From Guillardia theta CCMP2712 (Eukaryota; Protista; Cryptophyta): a stretch of DNA of 64,000 nt. The stretch is from the NCBI RefSeq assembly GCF_000315625.1, contig NW_005434598.1:60510-124509 (forward strand), read 5' to 3'. Within the stretch, counting starts at the first letter, position 1. Each line of letters begins with the position of its first letter. Positions 18,489-41,179 of the stretch are shown piece after piece. Under the pieces are notes generated by a model. The model saw nothing but the letters and a program-made list of their open reading frames with translations, did not search any database and was not told the DNA's origin. A program made the position numbers and the translations under genes.

Positions 18489-19080
18489 TCTCGTTCCCTC
18501 ACAACATGTCAAGCAGGCTCAGCGGCTTCATTTCCCATCCGGTTACACTATCACCCGACATCTCATCCTTCCCTGGCAGAGCAAATCTGATGTATCTTTC
18601 GAAACTGATCTGAGAATTTCAAATGTTAAAAAACATTTTCATGATAATCAAGTCAATTTGAGTGATTTCTTCCAATCTTGATTTCATAGGCCCATTTGTT
18701 GCTCTGGCCCGGAGCGTTCTGAGGCGGGGGGGGAGGGCAATCGAGGCGGGGGCCATGGGAGGGGACGGAACGAGGGGAAGGGGCGGAGGGAGGAGGAAGA
18801 GGGAGAGAGAGAGAGGGGAGGAAGGGGAGGGGAGGGGAGGGGGGCAAGTACTGCAGGTAGGGGAGGAGGGAACATGCCGGGAGCGAGGGAGGGAGCGAAG
18901 GAGCGAAGGAGCAAGGTTTTAGGGAGAGTTTAGGGTGGAGGTTTTAGAACGGGAGAGTGGGCGTGCTCAAGGGTGGGTAGAGGAATAGAAGAGAAGGGAA
19001 GACAGAAGGCGGAGGAGGGAGGACGTTGATATGTTGCTTGCAGAGAGGTCAAGTCATCGACCAGAGCACGGCCTTCGATC

Positions 19081-22000
19081 ATGCTTGGCGGCTCCATCAC
19101 CAGGAACTGTGTGTTGGCGCTAGGGCCCCGTAGACGCTTGCTGGTTCATAAGGCAAGGACGAGCTCGTTTGCGCTGCTCTCTGTCGGAGGAATCTTGTGC
19201 TGCTACTGCCCGTCTTTCATCTCAGCCTTCCTCGTTACTGCTCCACAGCCAAGACAACGTTACCATCCTCTCATAGGAACTACCGGCCGTCCTTTGATCT
19301 CTTACCCACCCAACGACATGCGAGCGCGTCTGCTGTCGAGAGCTGCTGAGGGAGGGAGAGCTGCAAGAGGGAGGGGAGGAGAAGGGGGATCAGGAGATAC
19401 AGCAGGGCAAGGAGCTTCCTCGTCAGACCTGTTGAGGATCTCAGATGATTTCGATGCCTTCGATGTTGAAGACATGGGGGTTGATGAGCTGAGGATGAAG
19501 TTGAAGGAAAGGAGCCTGTCGGTTGATGGAGATGTTGAAGTGCTCCGGGTACGTTTGGTTGCAGTTGTTGTTGATGATGGAGATGATGATGATGGAGACT
19601 TTGATGTAGGCGACGATGGTGGTGGTGGTGGTGGTGGTGGTGGTGATGAAAAGTTTGAGCAGGAAAGATTGTTACAGCATTTACTTCAGAAGCTGGAAGG
19701 TGAAGGTGAGGCGCTTGAGAAGATTGTGATGTAAGGCTCACAAGTTGCATGTAGAAGCGGAGCTTGACTCAGCATACGAGAAGATTTCAAACAAACAGAA
19801 ACAGCAAGGTCGAGAGCTGAAGTCGAAGACGACAAAATCTGTGAAGGAGGAGGATGAGGAGGAGGAAGGAGAGCAGGAGAAAGGAGGAGGACAAGGACGA
19901 GGACAGATAGATACATTGAGATGGCTCTATCTAGATGCAGAGTCAGTAGCTCTCCTGTCCATAGATCAAGTGAAAGATGCCCTGCAAGAGAGAGGAATGT
20001 CGGTAGACGGAACCGACAAGAAACTTCGAGCAGCCCTCCGTAGAGCCATCGAGGAGGACGAGGACGAGGACGAGGAGCAGGACGAGGAGGAGGAGGAGTT
20101 AAAACCAAGAGGGTCGTCGAAGGGGCAGGAGAATGATGAGAATGATATGATCACTGTTGAAGAGATTATGTCATTGAAGCAATCAGAGCTGAAGGAGGTT
20201 CTCAAGAGCTATGGGCTCCCATCAAGCGGCATCAAGTCTGTACTGCAGGTGCAATAGAGGAACACCCTCTCCTTCTTTCGCTTGTCAGCGTTCGCTTCTC
20301 ATCTTCCTCCCTCTCCCTTCTCTTCCCTCATCCTCCCCTCCCCCTCCCCCTTTCTCTCATCCTCCTGTTCCTTTCATCGATCCTTCTTTCCCTGTCTTCT
20401 TCCTCCTTCCCTTTCCTCCCCCACCCCCCTCCTTGTGCTCGTGTTAATCCAGCCTTGGGATCAGGGGAGGCTCATGGACTTCATAGAGAAGGAGCTCAAA
20501 GTCAAGCCGACCTCCAGCAAGTCTTCTGTTGACTCGGACGAGGTCCTAGGAGCATTTGACAACGCGCTCGATGAATGGTTTGGGCTTGGCACTGGCGCCA
20601 GGGGAGTTTTCCGCAAGAAGGCAAAGGAAGGCTTCTGCCCTGGCTGCGGCTGCAAACTTCAGTCAAGCTCGTCATCAGCTCCAGGCTATGTGCCGGAGAG
20701 CAAGGTGAGAAGAAAAGACTGCTCTTCCTCCTCCTCCTCCTCCTCCTCCTCCTCCTCGTCCTCCTCCTCCTCCAACACCACCATCCTTTCATTCGTCTTC
20801 TTTTCTTCTCCTCTCCTTCCTGCCTTTGCGGTTTCTTGCTCTTGGCTAGGAAATGATTGAAATGATGGAGATCATGATGATGTGTTTGTTTTGGATTGTG
20901 CTTGTGACGTTTTGCTTTTCAGACAGGACAAGAGAAAGTTGTATGTGTGCGGTGTTATAATTTGCAGCATTACGGAAAAGTCAATCCAGACCTTACAGCA
21001 CAGAACGCAAAATACACCGAGGTGAGGAGGAGTGTAGTTGGAGCATGGAGAATCGGGAGGAGCAGAAAAAGTTCAAGGAGAGGCGGAAGGGGAGGAGGAG
21101 GAGAAAGGGGGGATAGAGGGGAAGAGAAGAGGGGATCGCAGGAGGAGGCAAGACATTGAATAGACGGAAAACAGGTCTCCCCAGCCGCATTTCGGTCGAT
21201 CCTGGCTCCTCTCAAGAAACAGAGTTGTATCGTTTGCTATGTCGTTGATATCTTCGACTTTCACGGGACCTTCTTGCCGGACTTGAAGGAAATAGTGGGA
21301 AGGTACCTTCTCTTTCCTCCCTTCCTCTTCCCTTGATGTTTCCTTTCTCCGACATTATTTTATCATTCGCTTTCGAGGAGAAATTTGACAACATCTCATC
21401 TCTTCCTTTCCTTTGACTCTTCTGCTTTCTTTCGGTTTCATGTTTTTCTTCACTAACTTTGCTCCTTCTCCCTTGTCCCTCCCCTCCTCCCCCCTCGACT
21501 CTTCCCTCTTCCCACTCTCCTGCTCCTCCTCCTGCTCCTCCCCCTGCTCCCCCTGCTCCTCCTCCTGCTCCTCCTCTCTTTTTCAGGAATCCTGTCATCC
21601 TTGCGGTCAACAAGGCGGATCTTCTTCCCACTGACTTTCGCAGAGATCGAGTCAAGCAGTGGGTGAGGGAAGAGGCGAAAATCCTCGGCGACTACTTGGT
21701 GAGGATTTCATTTATGATCTTACTCATCTGCAAACATAGATAATGATCGTGACGATGATGATGATGATAGAGATGGTGGTGGAGGACATATATGTTTGAC
21801 AATGTAAAGAGAGAAGATGGTGATGTCATCTTCTCTGAGGTTTCTTTGAATTGCTCTAGTCGAGTTGATTGTTTGAGTTGATTATATGAACTCACAACTC
21901 TCGCAGATCGTAGATGTAGTTCTTATAAGCGCGGCATCTGGTTATGGTGTAAAGCTGCTGGAGCAGCAGCTGAGGTCGGTCTTCTCCTCTTGCAAACTTC

Positions 22001-34599: not shown

Positions 34600-35210
34600 C
34601 GTCGTGCCTCACCCCACCACCCTGCTTCAGACTACCCCCTTCTCCCCATAACCCCCTAATTCTAGACCACCCTTTCTTGAACATGGCAACCCTCTACATT
34701 CATGTTGAAGTACCGGTAATTTTGCGAACACAATTTCTCGATTTACTAGGGTAGGGTATCTTACAACGATGGGTCATACCACCCTACCCCATCCACCCAT
34801 TTTCAATCCTTACCCATCGCTTTACCCCCACCCCCCCACTCGATGCCCACCAGGGCCGCACGTACACAATGACACGTACCCCTACCCCCCTACCCCCTTT
34901 TTCATGGACTTCTTTGTGAATACCCCTACTCCTCTAACCAAAAGCTTCTGTCTGTGACGGGTTCTAGAAGAAAATGACTACCCTCACCCCTGTTTTTGGG
35001 TTGCTCGCAGCATCGATCACCCCTTCTTTGCATATGAAAAACACGGGTACTCTCCTCGTTCTACCGGGCCCGGCAGCGGCCGGGCAGCCTGCGGCCATCT
35101 CCCGGCCTGCGGCCCGGGGGCCGGCCGGGCCGGGCCGCCGTGACAAGTCAAGTTCTGCGGTCCAGCCAGTGAGCGGCGGCCCGGCCCGGGCCGCGGCAGC
35201 GGGTTGCCAA
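34600..35210. promoter_or_regulatory. ACCCTACCC cluster (34600-35060) followed by a CCGG island (35060-35210)
   Basis: Repeated cccctaccc/taccccc motifs, then ccgggcccggc...ggccggccgggccgggcc; upstream of the minus-strand gene. Confidence 0.45.
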
Positions 35211-35580
35211 GTTGCCGCCGCAGAATGCAGTCGAATGCCGGTAGTACATAACCGTGTGATGCCGAGCCTCAGGCAGTGTCGAGCTGAGTGCACTGATAAT
35301 AACTAGTAAATTGGAGTGATGCCGCACCGCACCGTACGGCCGGCGGCGCTCCGAGGCATCAAACCTCGGAATGCTGGTCGCATTCAACACTGACAAGAAA
35401 ATGTGTACTGGAGTGGATTCGAAAAGCAGAAATGAATCATAGCAGGATGGGTGAAATCGAAGATGGCGAAGGTGTGGTTGTTGTTTTGGGTTCAAGGTGA
35501 ACGAAGGCAATGAAGTCAGTATTGGTAGAACAGGATGTTTTGGGGATTTTGTTTTGAATTTGAATAAAGTATGAACTACT

Positions 35581-36150
35581 TCACCAATCCTTGAAAGAAC
35601 TCTCTACCTCTTCCAAGATCTCCGTGCACACCTGTTCGAGCCAAGATGAACAGTCGGCATGATATCTCAACTTCAAACATAGGAATGGGGTTCAAACAAA
35701 GGCAAGGAACTTCAAATAAGGAAACGTGGCTCAAACGAAGGCGGCACGGTGACTCAACAGCGAGGGAGGTGAAAAACAGTACCCATCATTCTTAACCTCT
35801 TCAAACAAGGGAAGCAGATTAGAGGCAGTGATTCCAAACAGCATCTTACCTCGCGAGGTTGAGCTGAATGCATCTCGTACAATCCAAACCACTTCGTGCT
35901 TGTCCTGTCTCAGCTGGGGCTGGTCATTCTTTTGGATGTAGCTCTGCCTCTCCTCATGGAAAGGAGTGAACGGAACTATCCTCCTCCAATCTCATTGGGC
36001 ATGGAGTAGAGGTTGATCCTGTCACGGATCATGTGGCCGCTGGCCAACAGCCCCGTCTCCGCCGAGTCAGCGATGGCGTTGGAGAACGATGAACCAACAG
36101 GGTTGGAGCAGACGATGAAGACCTTCTTCTGCAGTCCGGGTCTTCCACCA
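35581..36150 (-). pseudogene. Degenerate flavodoxin-like NAD(P)H:quinone oxidoreductase (Flavodoxin_2 family) fragment
   Basis: KKVFIVCSNPVGSSFSNAIADSAETGLLASGHMIRDRINLYSM resembles the family N-terminus and is followed by an in-frame TAG and a frameshift. WFGLYEM...EILEEVESSFKDW* resembles the C-terminus. The central P-x-W-W...K-x-x-x-D-R segment is missing. Confidence 0.5.
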
Positions 36151-36642
36151 AAAGGAGGAGGAGGATAAGGGAGGTAAGTCTGTTTGCCCGGTCCACAGCT
36201 GAATCTTGAGTGGCTCCAATGCCTTCATGACATTCTCCACGTACATCTTCGAACAAAACCAACGTCAGACTTACGCCAGTGTCTACCTGCACATGGGCGA
36301 GATGAAGATAAACGTCAAGAAATAATTCCTTCTGGTCTATCATTTCGAACATTCTATCTTACAACCATACTCCCTCAACTGTTCACTCAGCTGACGTCAT
36401 CTACTCTCTCTGATTCTGATTCAACCTGTCAAGTGTGACAAGAGTGAATCACGAGGTCTTCTTCTCCCGATCCCACTGCCTCATCATTTCCCTCTACTGA
36501 TTCTCTCACACGTCTCAGTCTTTCACGTCCTTGCTGATCTTTTCACACACGCTGATTCTATAGTGACACAAATCTTCATTATGAGCCTAGAGCTGGGAAT
36601 CACAAGGGTTTCCTATCTTTCTTCCTCCTCGTCCTTGTCCTT

Positions 36643-36677
<35 letters not shown>

Positions 36678-37151
36678 TGTCCTTGTCCTCGTCCTTGTCC
36701 TCGTCCTTGTCCTCTTTCTCATCCTCCTCCTATGGGAGGCATGGTCCTTGATCACCCGTCCGCCTCCTCTCATTCCAGTACTGCTGTTCTTCCTGAGACT
36801 GTGGGGTAGGGCTACATAATGCAGTCTAGCAATGCACTCTGCCTGCCATGCACTCTAGCTTAGGGAGAGGCTTGTTGATCGGGTCCGAAGGAAGGAATCG
36901 CCTCTGCTTCCACCACCGACCTGTAGACGGTGATATCTTGCCTTCTGTCTTACCAAGACGCTCGCAGCATGTCGTTGCCGTAACCAGCACTCATGCCCGA
37001 CTTCACATGCATCGGTCGCAACTCCTGGCGGGTGACCTGCATGCAGTGGCACTGATCTTTCGCAACATTGCAAACATGCTTGCAACCGATCGCACACTGG
37101 TGTCTGTTGGTTTATTGTCATTTCACGCCTCACCTCCTATTCCAACTCTCC

Positions 37152-39689
37152 TCATCCCATGCAATGCGCTCTCTCGCTGCCCGTGCTCTCGTCCGGTTTC
37201 TCTCCCCTCGCTGCCTCTCCCCTCCCTCCTGCACCTCCTTCTCCACCTCCCTCTCCTCCATCTGCACCAGCAGCATTCATCGAGTCCCCGTCGAGCATGT
37301 TCTCCCCGGGCAGTTTCCGGATGTAGTTGTATACAGTGGTGTAGGCCAGCTTGACGTATTCATCCTTGCTCTTCTTCCACGCTTCTTTCCCGTAAATTTT
37401 CTCCATGAGCATCTCGAGCGCACGGTCGAAGCATTTCTGGTAATTCTCATAAGTCACCTCCTCCCCTTCCTTCAACTCTCCTGACAGCCTCCCAAACTCT
37501 TCCAGCTTCTTCATCACTTTACCCGCTTTCGACAGGAACGCTCTCATCTGTCTCGTCTGAAGATCTTCGAACTTCAAACGCTTCAAGGGGCCGATGCGCT
37601 TCAGCTTCCCTTCCTTGTCCGTCCAATGCTCGCCCGTATGCCATCGCTTCCAAAGATCCATGCACGGCACATTTTGTACAAAACAATAATCCTGGGGGAC
37701 CATAGCGATTCTGCCGTTGTCCCATTGAAAAGCGTCTCCCACCAGGAAAGCATTTGAAGGCTCCATTCGTGCATTGACCTCGTCAGTTCGTGATTGCTGC
37801 TTCATGTGGACGACCTGTCTTCTTATGTCGTGACTCTCAAAAACCTTGGTGACGCTCTTTAAGATGTCATTCTTCAGATTGATCCTGAATCGACTCAAAC
37901 ACTCCACACCAACAAGCATCGCGCTATGCTTCTCAAAGCTCTGTTGCAATGCTGTATTAACCGCCTCGGGCATTTTCCTCATCGCGCTGTCTAGATTGCC
38001 TTGCAAACGTTCGATCTCTTCCCTGACCAACTTATTCTCTGCCATCGCGCGAGCATGCGGGGGAACGCCAGTAGGAGTCATCCCGCAGTCCTTGCACTGC
38101 CCGATGCCAGTTACCACGTGCTCTCGCAGAGATTTGAGGAAAGCAATAGTGTTGGTGCCTTGAAAACCAAACATTGGGGCTCCCCAGATAGGGCTGTCCC
38201 TGGGATACCATTGATGCAACACATCCAAGTGATATACCACGCTTGCGATGAAGTAAGGAATGCACCGTTTGAAGCAGCTCGGAAAGAAGTCGTAACCGTG
38301 AATAAACTTGTGCAGCCCAATCGCTCCTATCATATCTAAACCATTCTGGGTGAAGTGCGGTGGGAGGGATTCGAATAACTCCGAGGCCAAATCATTCCCA
38401 GCTAATATCCTTCCGCAGTAGTGGTCGTTTCCCCCTCCATCCAAGATGCACTGATCATGTGTAGTCTCAAGGGGCAAACATGCACGCAGGTACACGGATG
38501 GTGGACTTGGTCCACCTGGAATAGACAGAAGATGAGTGACGCTTCCCTTCCTGAAGCTACTAGAACCAATGTCTTTCCATTCTGCACCAGCCTTATCAGC
38601 GATGATTCTCTGGAGCACGCTGTTGAACCTGTGCTTCTGCTCTTTCCCTGGGAAGAACTTTGACGTGAACGTGTTTCCGCGAGGGAGTGTAATGATGTAC
38701 AGAGCCAGCGCTAAGATAGGGCATGTCTGTGGTTGCGTAGGACAAGCAAACACATGCGTCGTTCGGATGGAATACAGATCTGGATCCGCCGCTTTGCGAT
38801 CTTTCTTGGTATTTAACATGGTAATTTTCAAACAATCGTTCTCCCAATCTAGATGTTCCAGGTACAGCAGATCCAAACTATCACTGAGACAGCAACAGTT
38901 CCACAAGATTGCTGCTGCTGCATGCACGAAGAGACCAGTACCCCCTGGCTCCCTATTCTTCCTCTTTGCCTTCCATTCAATAAAGGTCCTGCAGATCTCC
39001 GTGTAACTCTGCACTGGCAGATGAAGTTTCCCCTCTGCCGCACGCATGTCTGCCTTTGATATTCTACCAGTGGTAGATTCTGCATACACTTCGATCATCT
39101 TGTCCAAGTTCTTCTCTAGAGACATGCCCGTCGCTGCTTCAACGCCGTTTGCCGTGAATTCCACATTGCGCTCGAGGTACAGGTCCTTCAATGCACTCCT
39201 GTATGCTTGTAATGTTGCAACCGACATGTCAGGCCCTTGAGCATGAGACGACTGAGACGCTCCTTCTGAAGTCTGGGCGTCTGCCTCGGAGTCACTGCCA
39301 TCGCTACCGCCATCCTCCACTTCGCCTTGAGGGCCAATCTTTCGTTTCTTGCTCCTCTCGGTGAAAGCCTTGTTTCTTGTCAGATGTCTGAACACTTCTC
39401 TCACACACGCCCACGAAAGTGGCAGCTTCAACTGTCCAGAGTCATCCAGCGCATCCACAAAAATCGTATTCCCTCCTTCCCTGGCTTTCTTAATGATATC
39501 CACCATTTTTTGAATCTTGTTCTTGTATATCTTCTGAGTGCTCTCTGCCAATCTTCTTCTCATTTTGTCATTCTCCTGAGCTTTTTTCTCTGCTGATAAT
39601 CTTTGAGCATCTTTCTCCATCTCTGGTGTAGTTTGTTGTTCGTCGCCTCCCATCAACTCCTGATCTCCCCTGCGCGGTATTTCATCCAT
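37152..39689 (-). CDS. Crypton-derived tyrosine-recombinase-fold protein (845 aa, intronless) with a probable C-terminal GCR1_C-like region; apparently catalytically inactive
   Basis: Crypton YR motifs: YRSALKDLY, EGKLHLP, LWNCCCLS, HLDWENDCL, HVFACPTQPQTCPILALA, DIGSSSFRKG, PGGPSPPSVYLRA, GGGNDHYCGRILAG, FESLPPHF. C-terminal FQWDNG...VPQDY...DLWKRWHTG...IGPLKRL. Confidence 0.85.
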   Translation of the reverse strand: MDEIPRRGDQELMGGDEQQTTPEMEKDAQRLSAEKKAQENDKMRRRLAESTQKIYKNKIQKMVDIIKKAREGGNTIFVDALDDSGQLKLPLSWACVREVFRHLTRNKAFTERSKKRKIGPQGEVEDGGSDGSDSEADAQTSEGASQSSHAQGPDMSVATLQAYRSALKDLYLERNVEFTANGVEAATGMSLEKNLDKMIEVYAESTTGRISKADMRAAEGKLHLPVQSYTEICRTFIEWKAKRKNREPGGTGLFVHAAAAILWNCCCLSDSLDLLYLEHLDWENDCLKITMLNTKKDRKAADPDLYSIRTTHVFACPTQPQTCPILALALYIITLPRGNTFTSKFFPGKEQKHRFNSVLQRIIADKAGAEWKDIGSSSFRKGSVTHLLSIPGGPSPPSVYLRACLPLETTHDQCILDGGGNDHYCGRILAGNDLASELFESLPPHFTQNGLDMIGAIGLHKFIHGYDFFPSCFKRCIPYFIASVVYHLDVLHQWYPRDSPIWGAPMFGFQGTNTIAFLKSLREHVVTGIGQCKDCGMTPTGVPPHARAMAENKLVREEIERLQGNLDSAMRKMPEAVNTALQQSFEKHSAMLVGVECLSRFRINLKNDILKSVTKVFESHDIRRQVVHMKQQSRTDEVNARMEPSNAFLVGDAFQWDNGRIAMVPQDYCFVQNVPCMDLWKRWHTGEHWTDKEGKLKRIGPLKRLKFEDLQTRQMRAFLSKAGKVMKKLEEFGRLSGELKEGEEVTYENYQKCFDRALEMLMEKIYGKEAWKKSKDEYVKLAYTTVYNYIRKLPGENMLDGDSMNAAGADGGEGGGEGGAGGRGEAARGEKPDESTGSERAHCMG

Positions 39690-41179
39690 GGTTAGCGCCT
39701 TCTGGGGTCAGCTGTTGACTGATATAGATTACAGAATTATTTTCAGTTATTTTAGAGCAGTACTAAGACATGGGGTGAGGGGTACAACCGACAGACCATA
39801 GGAAGAAAAGAATCCGCCTCAGCTAAAAGAAATAAGGTTTTCACATTATCAAAAACATCCTTAAATTGTTGCTATGTCAGGTTGAAAGTTACTCGGGTCA
39901 TTTCAAAAATAAGGTTTGAAACATTTGAAATATCCATTCTCAACAAAGGCAACATGCTCCCTTCCCCAACAAGGGGAATGAGCCTCCCCCTGCCTCCCTC
40001 CCCTCCCCCCTCCCCTCCTCTCTCTCCCCTCCCCTCCCCCCTNNNNNNNNNNNNNNNNNNNNNNNNNNNNNNNNNNNNNNNNNNNNNNNNNNNNNNNNNN
40101 NNNNNNNNNNNNNNNNNNNNNNNNNNNNNNNNNNNNNNNNNNNNNNNNNNNNNNNNNNNNNNNNNNNNNNNNNNNNNNNNNNNNNNNNNNNNNNNNNNNN
40201 NNNNNNNNNNNNNNNNNNNNNNNNNNNNNNNNNNNNNNNNNNNNNNNNNNNNNNNNNNNNNNNNNNNNNNNNNNNNNNNNNNNNNNNNNNNNNNNNNNNN
40301 NNNNNNNNNNNNNNNNNNNNNNNNNNNNNNNNNNNNNNNNNNNNNNNNNNNNNNNNNNNNNNNNNNNNNNNNNNNNNNNNNNNNNNNNNNNNNNNNNNNN
40401 NNNNNNNNNNNNNNNNNNNNNNNNNNNNNNNNNNNNNNNNNNNNNNNNNNNNNNNNNNNNNNNNNNNNNNNNNNNNNNNNNNNNNNNNNNNNNNNNNNNN
40501 NNNNNNNNNNNNNNNNNNNNNNNNNNNNNNNNNNNNNNNNNNNNNNNNNNNNNNNNNNNNNNNNNNNNNNNNNNNNNNNNNNNNNNNNNNNNNNNNNNNN
40601 NNNNNNNNNNNNNNNNNNNNNNNNNNNNNNNNNNNNNNNNNNNNNNNNNNNNNNNNNNNNNNNNNNNNNNNNNNNNNNNNNNNNNNNNNNNNNNNNNNNN
40701 NNNNNNNNNNNNNNNNNNNNNNNNNNNNNNNNNNNNNNNNNNNNNNNNNNNNNNNNNNNNNNNNNNNNNNNNNNNNNNNNNNNNNNNNNNNNNNNNNNNN
40801 NNNNNNNNNNNNNNNNNNNNNNNNNNNNNNNNNNNNNNNNNNNNNNNNNNNNNNNNNNNNNNNNNGCCAGACCTCTACGTGAACCAATGGCGGTACTTGA
40901 GCAAGACATGTTGGGGACCGGTGAGAGGAGAGAAGAGGAGAAAAGAGGAGAGGAGAGGAGAGGAGAGGAGAGGAGAGGAGAGGAGAGGAGAGGGGAGGGG
41001 AGGGGAGGGGAGAGGAGAGGAGAGGAGAGGAGAGGAGAGGAGAGGAGGAGGGAGAGGAGGAGAGTGGGACCGGGGATAGCCCCAAGAATCGTGTCAATGA
41101 TACCGGCATCCTCAAGATATCTTGATTTCTACACCCTTATACTATCCGTGATCAAGAAGGTTAAAACTTTGCTTCTGCA

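What the first reader, a model, noticed from the sequence alone, without database searches (positions are those of the whole stretch)
37152..39689. Candidate domesticated Crypton: intact 845-aa tyrosine-recombinase ORF with a dismantled active site
Seen: an uninterrupted 2.5-kb ORF among heavily spliced genes, with Crypton-type YR motifs (~39040-38355) and a C-terminal W/P-rich region resembling GCR1_C (~37740-37330). Established: YRs use an R-K-H-R-(H/W)-Y active site, which in CryptonS/F proteins reads approximately WNxxxRS, KxDQ, GTHSxRKG and RAGWxxxxxxxRY. Here these read WNCCCLS (R to L, codon CTC at 38886-38888), TKKDR (K kept), GSSSFRKG (H to S) and RACLPLETTHDQC (W to L; nucleophile Y to C, codon TGC at 38448-38450). 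Inference: four of six catalytic positions are lost while structural motifs and the whole frame are kept, which fits selection for a non-catalytic DNA-binding role better than neutral decay. Precedents are the Crypton-related fungal proteins Ndc10/Cbf2 (kinetochore) and Gcr1/Msn1/Hot1 (transcription factors) and animal ZMYM/KCTD1. An independent domestication in this algal lineage may be undescribed. The alignment to the consensus was done from memory.
Basis: partly seen in the sequence, partly recalled or inferred. Interest (0 to 1): 0.8.

Follow-up and report, generated by a model that had tools for sequence, protein, structure and literature searches.

The report
Catalytically dead Crypton-derived algal gene
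An intact, transcribed, single-copy gene of the alga Guillardia theta descends from Crypton "jumping-gene" recombinases that still move in the same genome, but it has lost four of the six residues needed to cut DNA, so it has most likely been kept as a non-cutting DNA-binding protein: a new case of a known kind of transposon domestication.

Summary
Window 37152-39689 (-) is an uninterrupted 845-aa ORF. It belongs to a large eukaryotic family (2006 hits) whose members nearly always carry the tyrosine-recombinase hexad R-K-H-R-W/H-Y with Cre-like spacing. This copy reads L-K-S-R-L-C.

- **Fold:** the AlphaFold model (pLDDT 89) matches only tyrosine recombinases and Ndc10 (Flp Z 15.6, Ndc10 15.0, Cre 13.1).
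- **Genome context:** the genome is Guillardia theta. It holds about 25-30 paralogous loci, including a 3.4-kb element in five 99-100% identical dispersed copies. This copy is single-copy at DNA level and has no recognisable element ends.
- **Expression:** it is transcribed unspliced in runs from at least three studies.
- **Selection:** it keeps 46 of 55 other conserved family positions. Its branch is no longer than that of its nearest paralogue. Simulated neutral decay never gave four lost catalytic sites with an open frame.
- **Sister paralogue:** another dead paralogue has a Hanusia phi counterpart and dN/dS 0.09.

Not supported: the GCR1_C identity of the conserved C-terminal domain. Not found: an orthologue of this gene itself. 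DNA binding is inferred, not shown.

Earlier notes of this scan describe similar dead Crypton-derived genes on other DNA of this genome. Verdict: a new member of a known kind, of moderate interest.

The parts
37152..39689 (-). 845-aa ORF plus stop codon (37152-37154): Crypton-derived, catalytically inactive tyrosine-recombinase-fold protein
37084..39679 (-). Extent of the unspliced transcript in assembled RNA contigs. The 5' ends stop 10-28 nt short of the first ATG, and the next in-frame Met is residue 13. The strand is assumed from the ORF, because contigs do not show strand.
   Evidence: X1 contig covers 37084-39661 at depth 27; X2 and X4 pieces reach 39670 and 39679; flanks have zero depth; raw RNA-seq reads of X16 pile up at 37132-37292
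39375..39554 (-). N-terminal conserved helical region (residues 46-105), shared with the paralogues and with the internal-deletion derivatives
39339..39350 (-). KKRK basic cluster (residues 114-117) inside an acidic disordered linker. It looks like a nuclear localisation signal (inference). Basic clusters lie at the same place in the two sister paralogues.
38940..39224 (-). SAM-like core-binding (N-terminal DNA-binding) domain of the recombinase fold, residues 156-250
   Evidence: Phage_int_SAM_4 in 7 relatives (best E 4e-6) and Phage_int_SAM_1 in 6; Cre alignment starts at model residue 13
38121..38927 (-). Tyrosine-recombinase catalytic-fold domain, residues 255-523, with a dead active site
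38886..38888 (-). Leu268 (CTC) at the position of catalytic Arg I (R in 118/119 homologues)
38805..38807 (-). Lys295, catalytic Lys, retained
38559..38561 (-). Ser377 (AGT) at the position of catalytic His (H in 140/145). The precise loss of the 51-nt intron that the paralogues carry lies just upstream, at Gly375 (38565-38567).
38550..38552 (-). Arg380, catalytic Arg II, retained
38475..38477 (-). Leu405 (TTG) at the position of catalytic Trp/His (W in 123, H in 12, Q in 12 of 148)
38448..38450 (-). Cys414 (TGC) at the position of the nucleophile Tyr (Y in 144/147). The preceding conserved Arg413 is Gln.
37833..38060 (-). Two long helices (residues 544-619), a possible coiled-coil or oligomerisation element (inference)
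   Evidence: helices 405-449 and 456-480 of the model
37305..37742 (-). Family-conserved C-terminal domain (residues 650-795; W..G..H.VP..F.FP......W.LW..G.....I.P). It is confidently folded, has no solved structural relative and is not Pfam GCR1_C.
37155..37304 (-). Gly/Glu-rich low-complexity tail (residues 796-845), absent from the nearest paralogue

Best explanation
The gene is an exapted (domesticated) descendant of a Crypton-type tyrosine-recombinase transposon of Guillardia theta.

What is shown:
- It keeps the complete recombinase architecture: N-terminal region, SAM-like core-binding domain, catalytic-fold domain, long helices and the family's conserved C-terminal domain.
- It cannot carry out the recombinase's DNA cleavage and rejoining chemistry as that chemistry is understood. 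The nucleophile Tyr, the first Arg, the His and the Trp are replaced by Cys, Leu, Ser and Leu.
- It is immobile: single-copy, with no recognisable element ends.
- It is transcribed as an unspliced mRNA of about 2.6 kb.
- Its reading frame and its non-catalytic conserved positions have been preserved by selection.

What is inferred:
- It acts in the nucleus as a non-cutting DNA clamp, as Ndc10/Cbf2 and Gcr1 do in yeast and the DUF3504 proteins do in animals. The two-lobed recombinase fold would bind DNA, with the retained Lys295 and Arg380 still available for backbone contacts.
- The long helices and the C-terminal domain would serve for oligomerisation or partner binding.
- Its target could be host regulatory DNA or the ends of the still-active Cryptons.

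It forms a clade with two other single-copy paralogues (contig C64 and contig C4 near 364.5 kb). All three have lost the catalytic His. This suggests, but does not prove, one early shift of function followed by duplication and further independent loss of catalytic residues.
For: **Family and active site.**
- 2006 homologues at E<=1e-3. The hexad RKHRWY is complete in 91 of 153 aligned hits and near-invariant column by column.
- Spacing of the six positions is 27-82-3-25-9, against 28-88-3-23-9 in Cre (the Cre numbering is from my own knowledge).
- The window copy reads LKSRLC.

**Fold.**
- The AF2 model has pLDDT 89 and pTM 0.84.
- The six Foldseek hits with E<=0.001 are Cre/Tre and Flp, and all 50 rows listed are Cre, Flp, XerH or Ndc10.
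- VIA scores: Z 15.6 for Flp, 15.0 for Ndc10 (3sqi), 13.8 for XerA, 13.1 for Cre. The Cre alignment (model 13-270 on Cre 80-319) places model 266 and 275 (L405, C414) at Cre W315 and Y324.

**Transposon origin.**
- About 25-30 paralogous loci in several subfamilies.
- One subfamily has five dispersed copies of a ~3.4-kb element, 99-100% identical, with shared ends and differing flanks.

**This copy is fixed and expressed.**
- Single-copy DNA with no flanking repeats.
- RNA contigs from runs of three studies cover only 37084-39679, and raw RNA-seq reads of a fourth run lie at the 3' end.

**Selection.**
- 46 of 55 highly conserved non-catalytic positions are kept, the same number as in the nearest paralogue. 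Of the five catalytic positions in that set (W405 is under the cut-off), 2 are kept (Fisher p = 0.05); with W405 counted, 2 of 6.
- In 4000 neutral-substitution runs per divergence level, none gave >=4 of the 6 sites changed with no stop. P(no stop) is 0.0065 at 5% divergence, where P(>=4/6 changed) is 0.0015.
- The end branch is 0.53, against 0.48 for the sister paralogue and 1.14 for the other dead paralogue.
- dN is 0.46 against saturated dS (>=3) versus the sister paralogue, and the catalytic-fold region is the most conserved segment.

**Precedent in the same clade.**
- The dead paralogue on contig C4 is 86-89% identical to a Hanusia phi protein.
- It has dN/dS 0.088 against a 97.6%-identical metagenome contig.
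Against: - No orthologue of this particular gene was found in any protein collection or in JGI metagenomes. Its own dN/dS and age are therefore unknown.
- Hanusia phi proteins of the family exist in the database, but none is its counterpart.
- dS against the nearest paralogue is saturated, so the low ratio sums both branches over a long time.
- The contrast between catalytic and non-catalytic sites is only borderline significant (p = 0.05).
- The simulation starts from today's sequence and ignores indels and selection on part of the history.
- DNA binding, nuclear location and any phenotype are untested.
- The strand of the transcript is not shown by contigs. The raw reads come from a run whose library strand convention is not known to me.
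- The residue equivalence with Cre rests on aligned ranges and motif order, not on a residue-by-residue superposition.
Confidence: 0.68

Rival explanations
1. It is a Crypton-derived inhibitor. A catalytically dead recombinase would bind Crypton ends or join recombinase tetramers and so poison transposition of the active Cryptons in the same genome, as truncated or dead transposases repress P elements or Tn5. This is a special case of exaptation with a defined target.
For: - Active-looking Cryptons coexist with it (five copies 99-100% identical).
- All domains that could mediate DNA binding and oligomerisation are retained while only the chemistry is lost.
- Tyrosine recombinases act as tetramers (established knowledge).
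Against: - It is only about 41% identical to the active subfamily, so shared DNA specificity or mixed assembly is doubtful.
- No binding data exist.
- The two sister paralogues differ strongly from one another, which fits diversified host roles as well.
Confidence: 0.15
2. It is an ordinary dead transposon relic whose frame is open by chance or because inactivation was recent. No host function exists.
For: - No orthologue was found.
- The genome holds other decayed copies with single catalytic substitutions (R to T, G or W).
- Transposon relics can be transcribed.
Against: - Neutral simulation: the joint probability of four lost catalytic sites and no stop was below 1/4000 at every divergence level. 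The product of the separate probabilities is about 1e-5 at 5% divergence.
- 46/55 conserved non-catalytic positions are kept.
- The branch length equals that of the sister paralogue.
- At least five nucleotide changes lie in four catalytic codons, yet there is no frameshift or stop in 845 codons.
Confidence: 0.1
3. It is still an enzyme, using other residues (for example Cys414 as nucleophile, or Tyr424) or a different chemistry.
For: - Lys295, Arg380 and Arg402 are retained.
- A Cys sits exactly at the nucleophile position.
Against: - Arg I, His, Trp and the Arg before the Tyr are all gone as well.
- Tyr424 occupies a hydrophobic column and is also present in paralogues that keep Tyr414.
- To my knowledge no tyrosine recombinase is known to work with Cys.
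Confidence: 0.03

Closest known systems
CryptonS / CryptonF DNA transposons (Goodwin et al. 2003; Kojima and Jurka 2011, PMC3212892)
   Same: - The encoded protein has the tyrosine-recombinase fold with an R-K-H-R-W/H-Y site in active members.
- The elements are about 3.4 kb and carry this one gene, with no reverse transcriptase, LTRs or long TIRs.
- Relatives occur in oomycetes (Lagenidium, Aphanomyces).
- The conserved C-terminal region is not GCR1_C, as described for CryptonS.
- The genes contain introns.
   Different: - This copy is single-copy, has no recognisable ends and has a dead active site.
- The host is a cryptophyte, a group not in the 2011 host list.
- The ends of the active G. 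theta subfamily are not the TATGG termini reported for most CryptonS elements.
- Direct comparison with Repbase sequences was not possible.
Ndc10/Cbf2 (budding-yeast kinetochore CBF3 subunit) and Gcr1, Hot1/Msn1, Cdg1
   Same: - They are Crypton-derived host proteins with a recombinase fold that has lost its catalytic site and binds DNA without cutting.
- The model aligns to K. lactis Ndc10 D1-D2 at Z 15.0 (231 residues, rmsd 3.7).
- NDC10_II gives weak Pfam hits in 2 of 69 relatives.
   Different: - There is no orthology. These are separate events in fungi (CryptonF lineage with GCR1_C).
- Pfam NDC10_II and GCR1_C do not match this protein.
- The function here is unknown.
Animal DUF3504 genes (KCTD1, KIAA1958, ZMYM2-4, QRICH1, WOC)
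   Same: They are ancient domestications of Crypton recombinase domains that lack most of the catalytic tetrad (PMC3212892).
   Different: - They derive from CryptonA, and only the recombinase domain is kept, fused to other domains.
- Pfam DUF3504 does not match this protein.
- Here the whole transposon protein is kept.
Dead paralogue of the same genome, contig C4 364560-366908 (GUITHDRAFT_160772)
   Same: - It lies in the same clade (support 86/90).
- It is single-copy, full length and has a dead active site.
- It shares the loss of the catalytic His.
   Different: - It has a Hanusia phi counterpart (86-89% identity) and a measured dN/dS of 0.088.
- It keeps the 51-nt intron, loses the Lys and keeps the Trp.
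- It is only 36-38% identical to the window protein.

Membership tests
Tyrosine recombinase superfamily (fold) | Two-lobed fold: SAM-like core-binding domain plus catalytic domain | tested here: met
   AF2 model pLDDT 89. The Foldseek and VIA hit lists are all tyrosine recombinases or Ndc10, with Z 13-15.6. Phage_int_SAM_4 and Phage_int_SAM_1 match relatives.
Tyrosine recombinase superfamily (enzyme) | Catalytic R-K-H-R-H/W-Y including the nucleophile Tyr | tested here: not met
   The window protein reads L-K-S-R-L-C. The family reads RKHRWY.
Crypton transposons (family level) | The element encodes a tyrosine recombinase as its only enzyme, with no reverse transcriptase and no LTRs | tested here: met
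   The ~3.4-kb multi-copy element of the sister subfamily is almost filled by the one gene. No long terminal repeats were found.
Crypton transposons (family level) | Short (4-6 bp) terminal direct repeats as crossover sites | tested here: inconclusive
   One copy shows TAGAA at both junctions and the others show 4 of 5 or less. The ends are defined only to within about 5 bp.
Crypton transposons (this copy as a mobile element) | Several copies with shared ends | tested here: not met
   The ORF and its flanks are single-copy at DNA level. No terminal repeats lie around the ORF.
CryptonS group | Sequence clustering with Repbase CryptonS recombinases | not testable with these tools
   Repbase is not available. 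Indirect evidence: oomycete relatives, and the C-terminal fold matches oomycete hypothetical-protein clusters at TM 0.53-0.56.
CryptonS group | TATGG-type termini in most elements (PMC3212892) | tested here: not met
   The ends of the active G. theta subfamily read approximately AACTAAACAG...TTGATTAGAA.
GCR1_C DNA-binding domain (PF12550) | Match to the Pfam model | tested here: not met
   No hit at E<=10 for the protein. 1 of 66 C-terminal domains of relatives hits at E 0.027, which is noise level. There is no hit in the genome, but the controls were uninformative. Only language-model neighbours carry it.
Ndc10/Cbf2 | NDC10_II Pfam match or orthology | tested here: not met
   No Pfam hit for this protein. 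2 of 69 relatives hit at E 0.019. The structural similarity (Z 15.0) is no higher than to Flp.
DUF3504 (animal Crypton-derived domain) | Match to PF12012 | tested here: not met
   No hit, and it is not among the listed families for relatives. It appears only as a low-score language-model neighbour, 0.87-0.88.
Domesticated transposon gene | Single copy, immobile, intact frame, transcribed | tested here: met
Domesticated transposon gene | Orthologues in other species under purifying selection | tested here: inconclusive
   None was found for this gene. The feature is met for the sister dead paralogue. Indirect tests for this gene favour selection.

The most novel reading that the evidence does not exclude
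The window gene, the C64 gene and the C4 gene would be products of one Crypton domestication. It would predate the Guillardia/Hanusia split and be marked by the shared loss of the catalytic His. It would then have expanded into a small family of recombinase-fold DNA-binding proteins specific to cryptophytes. These would have host roles such as chromatin, centromere or transcription factors, or would act as a defence that poisons the still-active Cryptons. That would be a third independent large-scale reuse of Crypton recombinases, after fungi and animals, in a separate eukaryotic supergroup.
Probability: 0.3. Interest if true: 0.65.

Novelty: new member of a known kind. Interest (0 to 1): 0.45.

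Why it matters
Crypton recombinases have given rise to essential host proteins twice. In yeast these are the kinetochore protein Ndc10 and the transcription factor Gcr1. In animals they are the DUF3504 genes such as ZMYM2 and KCTD1.

A cryptophyte case would show the same route in an unrelated eukaryotic supergroup. Here the active parent elements, the intermediate forms and the dead derivatives all sit in one genome. The C64 paralogue has lost only the His. The window gene and the C4 gene are fully dead.

That makes the stepwise loss of catalysis during domestication directly comparable and testable. It also gives candidate DNA-binding regulators for an alga with few characterised transcription or chromatin factors. 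In the papers I could search, no description of Cryptons or Crypton-derived genes in cryptophytes turned up.

Tried and rejected
- **Pfam on the protein.** Only a noise hit, GPAT_N at E 0.11.
- **PDB sequence searches.** With the protein and with the family profile, noise only.
- **The search for homologous proteins.** The word index found few relatives: 4, 7 and 0 hits. The exhaustive representative search was needed.
- **JGI metagenome scan for close relatives.** None.
- **Exact-sequence look-up.** The 845-aa protein is not in the collection, so the public gene model is absent or different.
- **Whole-genome search with the Pfam models GCR1_C and NDC10_II.** Nothing, but the controls did not ring either, so this is uninformative.
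- **C-terminal domain fold.** No solved relative: Foldseek best E 0.9, VIA-wide best Z 3.6.
- **dN/dS against the paralogues.** dS is saturated or undefined, so only an upper-bound style statement is possible.
- **Search for terminal direct or inverted repeats around the ORF.** Only microsatellite-like and chance matches.
- **Poly(A) remnant downstream of the ORF.** Sought as a sign of retroposition that could explain the missing intron. None is visible in 37040-37150.
- **Earlier findings by place.** Nothing near.
Full report
**1. The observation**

The window holds an uninterrupted ATG-to-stop ORF of 845 codons at 37152-39689 on the minus strand. Apart from frames that run through an assembly gap or a low-complexity stretch, it is about twice as long as any other ORF in the 64 kb.

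An assembly gap begins 350 nt upstream of the ATG, at 40043.

**2. The genome and the family**

The nearest database protein is GUITHDRAFT_113076 of Guillardia theta CCMP2712. The window's assembly has 87.1 Mb in 669 contigs.

A six-frame search of that assembly finds 67 matching stretches, grouped into roughly 25-30 loci at 28-47% identity. None is close to the window copy. At DNA level the ORF and its flanks are unique. The exceptions are a (GTCCTC)n-like repeat at 36602-36749 and one 353-nt stretch.

An exhaustive HMMER search of 1.84 billion representatives gives 2006 homologues at E<=1e-3 and 152 at E<=1e-30. The named ones come from the cryptophyte Hanusia phi and the oomycetes Lagenidium giganteum and Aphanomyces euteiches.

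**3. The active site**

In an alignment of the 153 best hits, six columns are almost invariant:

| Position | Family residue | Count | Window residue |
|---|---|---|---|
| 268 | R | 118/119 | L |
| 295 | K | 125/132 | K |
| 377 | H | 140/145 | S |
| 380 | R | 144/146 | R |
| 405 | W (also H 12, Q 12) | 123/148 | L |
| 414 | Y | 144/147 | C |

- The spacing of the six positions is 27-82-3-25-9. The catalytic residues of Cre (R173, K201, H289, R292, W315, Y324, from my own knowledge) give 28-88-3-23-9.
- The genome's own paralogues read WNxxCRSE, KTKxDQ, G[ST]HS[FL]RKG and RASWxxGxxxDRY.
- The window protein reads L-K-S-R-L-C. The conserved Arg before the Tyr is Gln.
- The His-to-Ser change needs two nucleotide changes, so at least five substitutions lie in the four lost codons.
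It is also Tyr in paralogues that keep Tyr414.

**4. Fold**

- Residues 140-620, folded with a 69-sequence alignment, give pLDDT 89.2 and pTM 0.84.
- Foldseek against the PDB lists only Cre, Flp, XerH and Ndc10.
- The second-look aligner gives Z 15.6 for Flp, 15.0 for K. lactis Ndc10 D1-D2, 13.8 for archaeal XerA and 13.1 for Cre.
- In the Cre alignment, model 13-270 lies on Cre 80-319. This puts model residues 266 and 275 (L405, C414) at Cre W315 and Y324 by extrapolation.
- Pfam finds the integrase SAM-like N-terminal domain in 7 and 6 of 69 relatives, and NDC10_II weakly in 2.

The family is therefore a tyrosine-recombinase family, and the window protein has the fold but not the active site.

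**5. The family is mobile in this genome**

Five loci (contigs C43, C1, C342, C4 near 207 kb, C53) share a segment of about 3.4 kb at 99.3-100% identity, although not all five hold its whole length. The shared left end was seen in all five and the shared right end in three, and the flanks mostly differ. The segment is almost filled by the one gene, whose hexad is intact.

One copy has TAGAA at both junctions. The others match less well, so the short direct repeats typical of Cryptons are only suggested.

This matches the definition of Cryptons in Kojima and Jurka 2011 (PMC3212892). It matches their CryptonS group in particular. That group occurs in oomycetes and a diatom, lacks GCR1_C and has a conserved C-terminal region. 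I could not compare with Repbase sequences, and the termini here are not TATGG.

**6. The window copy is expressed**

- Contigs of three runs from three studies cover 37084-39661 (one 2578-nt contig, depth 27), 37286-39670 and 37288-39679.
- Depth is zero over 35200-37083 and 39708-40020. This is what RNA gives and genomic DNA does not.
- There are no joints, so the mRNA is unspliced.
- A run recorded as RNA-seq puts its reads at 37132-37292, the 3' end of the gene.
- The contigs stop 10-28 nt short of the first ATG, so translation may begin at Met13.
- The strand is not shown by contigs.

**7. Is the frame kept by selection?**

- **(a) Conserved positions.** Sixty columns are >=85% conserved in the family: 55 non-catalytic and five of the six catalytic positions (W405 falls under the cut-off). 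The window protein keeps 46 of the 55, exactly as many as its nearest paralogue. It keeps 2 of the five catalytic ones (Fisher p = 0.05), or 2 of 6 with W405 counted.
- **(b) Branch length.** In a maximum-likelihood tree the cryptophyte sequences form a clade (100/99).
  - The window gene is sister to the C64 gene (support 79/66).
  - The C4 dead paralogue joins those two (support 86/90).
  - End branches are 0.53, 0.48 and 1.14. The window gene has therefore not evolved faster than a paralogue that keeps five of the six residues.
- **(c) Neutral simulation.** Substitutions applied to the ORF give P(no stop) = 0.12 at 2% divergence, 0.0065 at 5% and 0 of 4000 at 10%. P(>=4 of the 6 sites changed) is 0, 0.0015 and 0.016 at those levels. 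The joint event never occurred.
- **(d) dN and dS.** Against the C64 gene, dN is 0.46 and dS is saturated (about 3). The catalytic-fold region has the lowest dN, 0.37.

Together these reject neutral decay. They do not date the loss of the residues.

**8. Orthologues**

None was found for this gene in any of these:
- the 90%-clustered collection;
- the 50% representatives, where the second-best hit is 33% identical;
- JGI metagenomes.

The exact protein is not in the collection. This is the main gap in the case.

**9. The sister dead paralogue**

The C4 gene (364560-366908, GUITHDRAFT_160772) reads WNCCCSS, has lost the Lys, reads GANLLKK and has lost the Tyr.

- A Hanusia phi protein of 808 aa is 86-89% identical to it.
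- An ENA metagenome contig is 97.6% identical in DNA, intron included.
- Between that contig and G. theta there are 36 synonymous and 12 non-synonymous codon differences: dN 0.0065, dS 0.074, ratio 0.088.

Domestication of a dead member of this clade is thus shown directly.

All three clade members have replaced the catalytic His (Ser, Gln, Asn), a residue kept in 97% of the family. That fits one early event, with Arg and Tyr lost independently later, since the replacement residues differ. This is inference.

**10. Intron**

The C64 gene, the C4 gene and the active subfamily share a 51-nt phase-1 intron with an in-frame stop, immediately before the GxHSFRKG motif. The annotated C64 protein splices it out.

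The window gene lacks it precisely, at Gly375. No poly(A) remnant is visible downstream of the ORF, so how the intron was lost is open.

**11. The C-terminal domain**

- Residues 650-795 are conserved across the family.
- They fold confidently, with pLDDT above 94 for the core.
- No solved structure resembles the domain.
- Its nearest predicted-structure clusters are unannotated oomycete and ascomycete proteins, at TM 0.52-0.56.
- Pfam GCR1_C does not match.
- A language-model search lists fungal NDC10_II+GCR1_C clusters and a diatom GCR1_C cluster as nearest neighbours, at 0.94-0.98. This is a lead only, and the recombinase part of the query may drive it.

**12. Mechanism**

- **Shown:** recombinase fold, dead site, fixed locus, expression, constraint.
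- **Inferred:** a nuclear DNA-clamping protein without cleavage, analogous to Ndc10 or Gcr1.
  - A KKRK cluster lies at 114-117, with basic clusters at the same place in both sister paralogues.
  - The long helices at 544-619 and the C-terminal domain would serve for assembly or partners.
- **Target:** whether this is host DNA or Crypton ends (the inhibitor model) is open.

**13. Novelty**

Two full-text searches found no paper on Cryptons or Crypton-derived genes in cryptophytes. The one paper that mentions both words cites Cryptons only in passing.

Earlier notes of this scan describe an active 3.4-kb Crypton and several other dead, single-copy Crypton-derived genes on other pieces of this genome. 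They agree with this reading but are not independent evidence.

The gene is a new member of a known kind, Crypton domestication, in a new host lineage.

Noticed in passing
G000:C4:364560-366908 (L007, L037); L039: A second catalytically dead paralogue (GUITHDRAFT_160772). A Hanusia phi protein (P0180) is 86-89% identical to it. Against a 97.6%-identical ENA metagenome contig its dN/dS is 0.088. This is clear purifying selection on a dead Crypton-derived gene.
   Followed up: yes
L031:5523-8912 and L032-L035 (contigs C43, C1, C342, C4 near 207 kb, C53): A Crypton-like element of about 3.4 kb in five dispersed copies, 99-100% identical, with an intact R-K-H-R-W-Y site, shared ends and mostly different flanks. 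TAGAA stands at both junctions of one copy, a possible 5-bp crossover repeat. Two loci (L033, L035) share their left flank but not their right flank.
   Followed up: partly
G000:C20:16209-17641 and 18801-20233, C5:1003937-1005369, C230:11-1245 (L020-L022): Near-identical copies that keep only the N-terminal (residues ~15-234) and C-terminal (~556-796) parts of the protein and lack the recombinase catalytic domain. Each has an in-frame TAA. A Hanusia phi protein (P0028, 482 aa) has a similar make-up. They may be non-autonomous derivatives or another reused gene.
   Followed up: no
window 38565-38567, compared with L002, L003, L007: The window gene precisely lacks a 51-nt phase-1 intron that three related lineages share at the same codon. 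No poly(A) trace lies downstream.
   Followed up: partly
G000:C64:166056-168371 (L002, P0001): The nearest paralogue (47% identity), also single-copy, keeps R, K, R, W and Y but has Gln for the catalytic His. It may be an intermediate stage of the same domestication.
   Followed up: partly
window 39661-39689: The assembled transcripts end at 39661-39679, short of the first ATG (39687-39689). The true start may be Met13 (codon at 39651-39653). The exact 845-aa protein is not in the public protein collection, so the public gene model is missing or different.
   Followed up: partly
window 36602-36749: A (GTCCTC/GTCCTT)n repeat of about 110-150 nt, 420 nt downstream of the gene, with dozens of 80-96% identical copies across the genome, often in tandem blocks.
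   Followed up: no
window 35895-36247: A 353-nt stretch 79% identical to contig C110:130279-130631. Its nature is unknown.
   Followed up: no
window 39983-40042 and 40043 to about 40900: A C/T-rich low-complexity run (CCTCCC-like) leads into an assembly gap of roughly 850 N about 350 nt upstream of the gene, so the promoter region is incomplete.
   Followed up: no
L010-L012, L014-L018 (contigs C103, C105, C48, C169, C16, C276, C51, C59): Three further subfamilies of the recombinase gene, each in 2-3 near-identical copies. Their introns lie at other positions (around residues 395-409 and 616-650). Some copies carry single catalytic substitutions (R to G, R to W).
   Followed up: no
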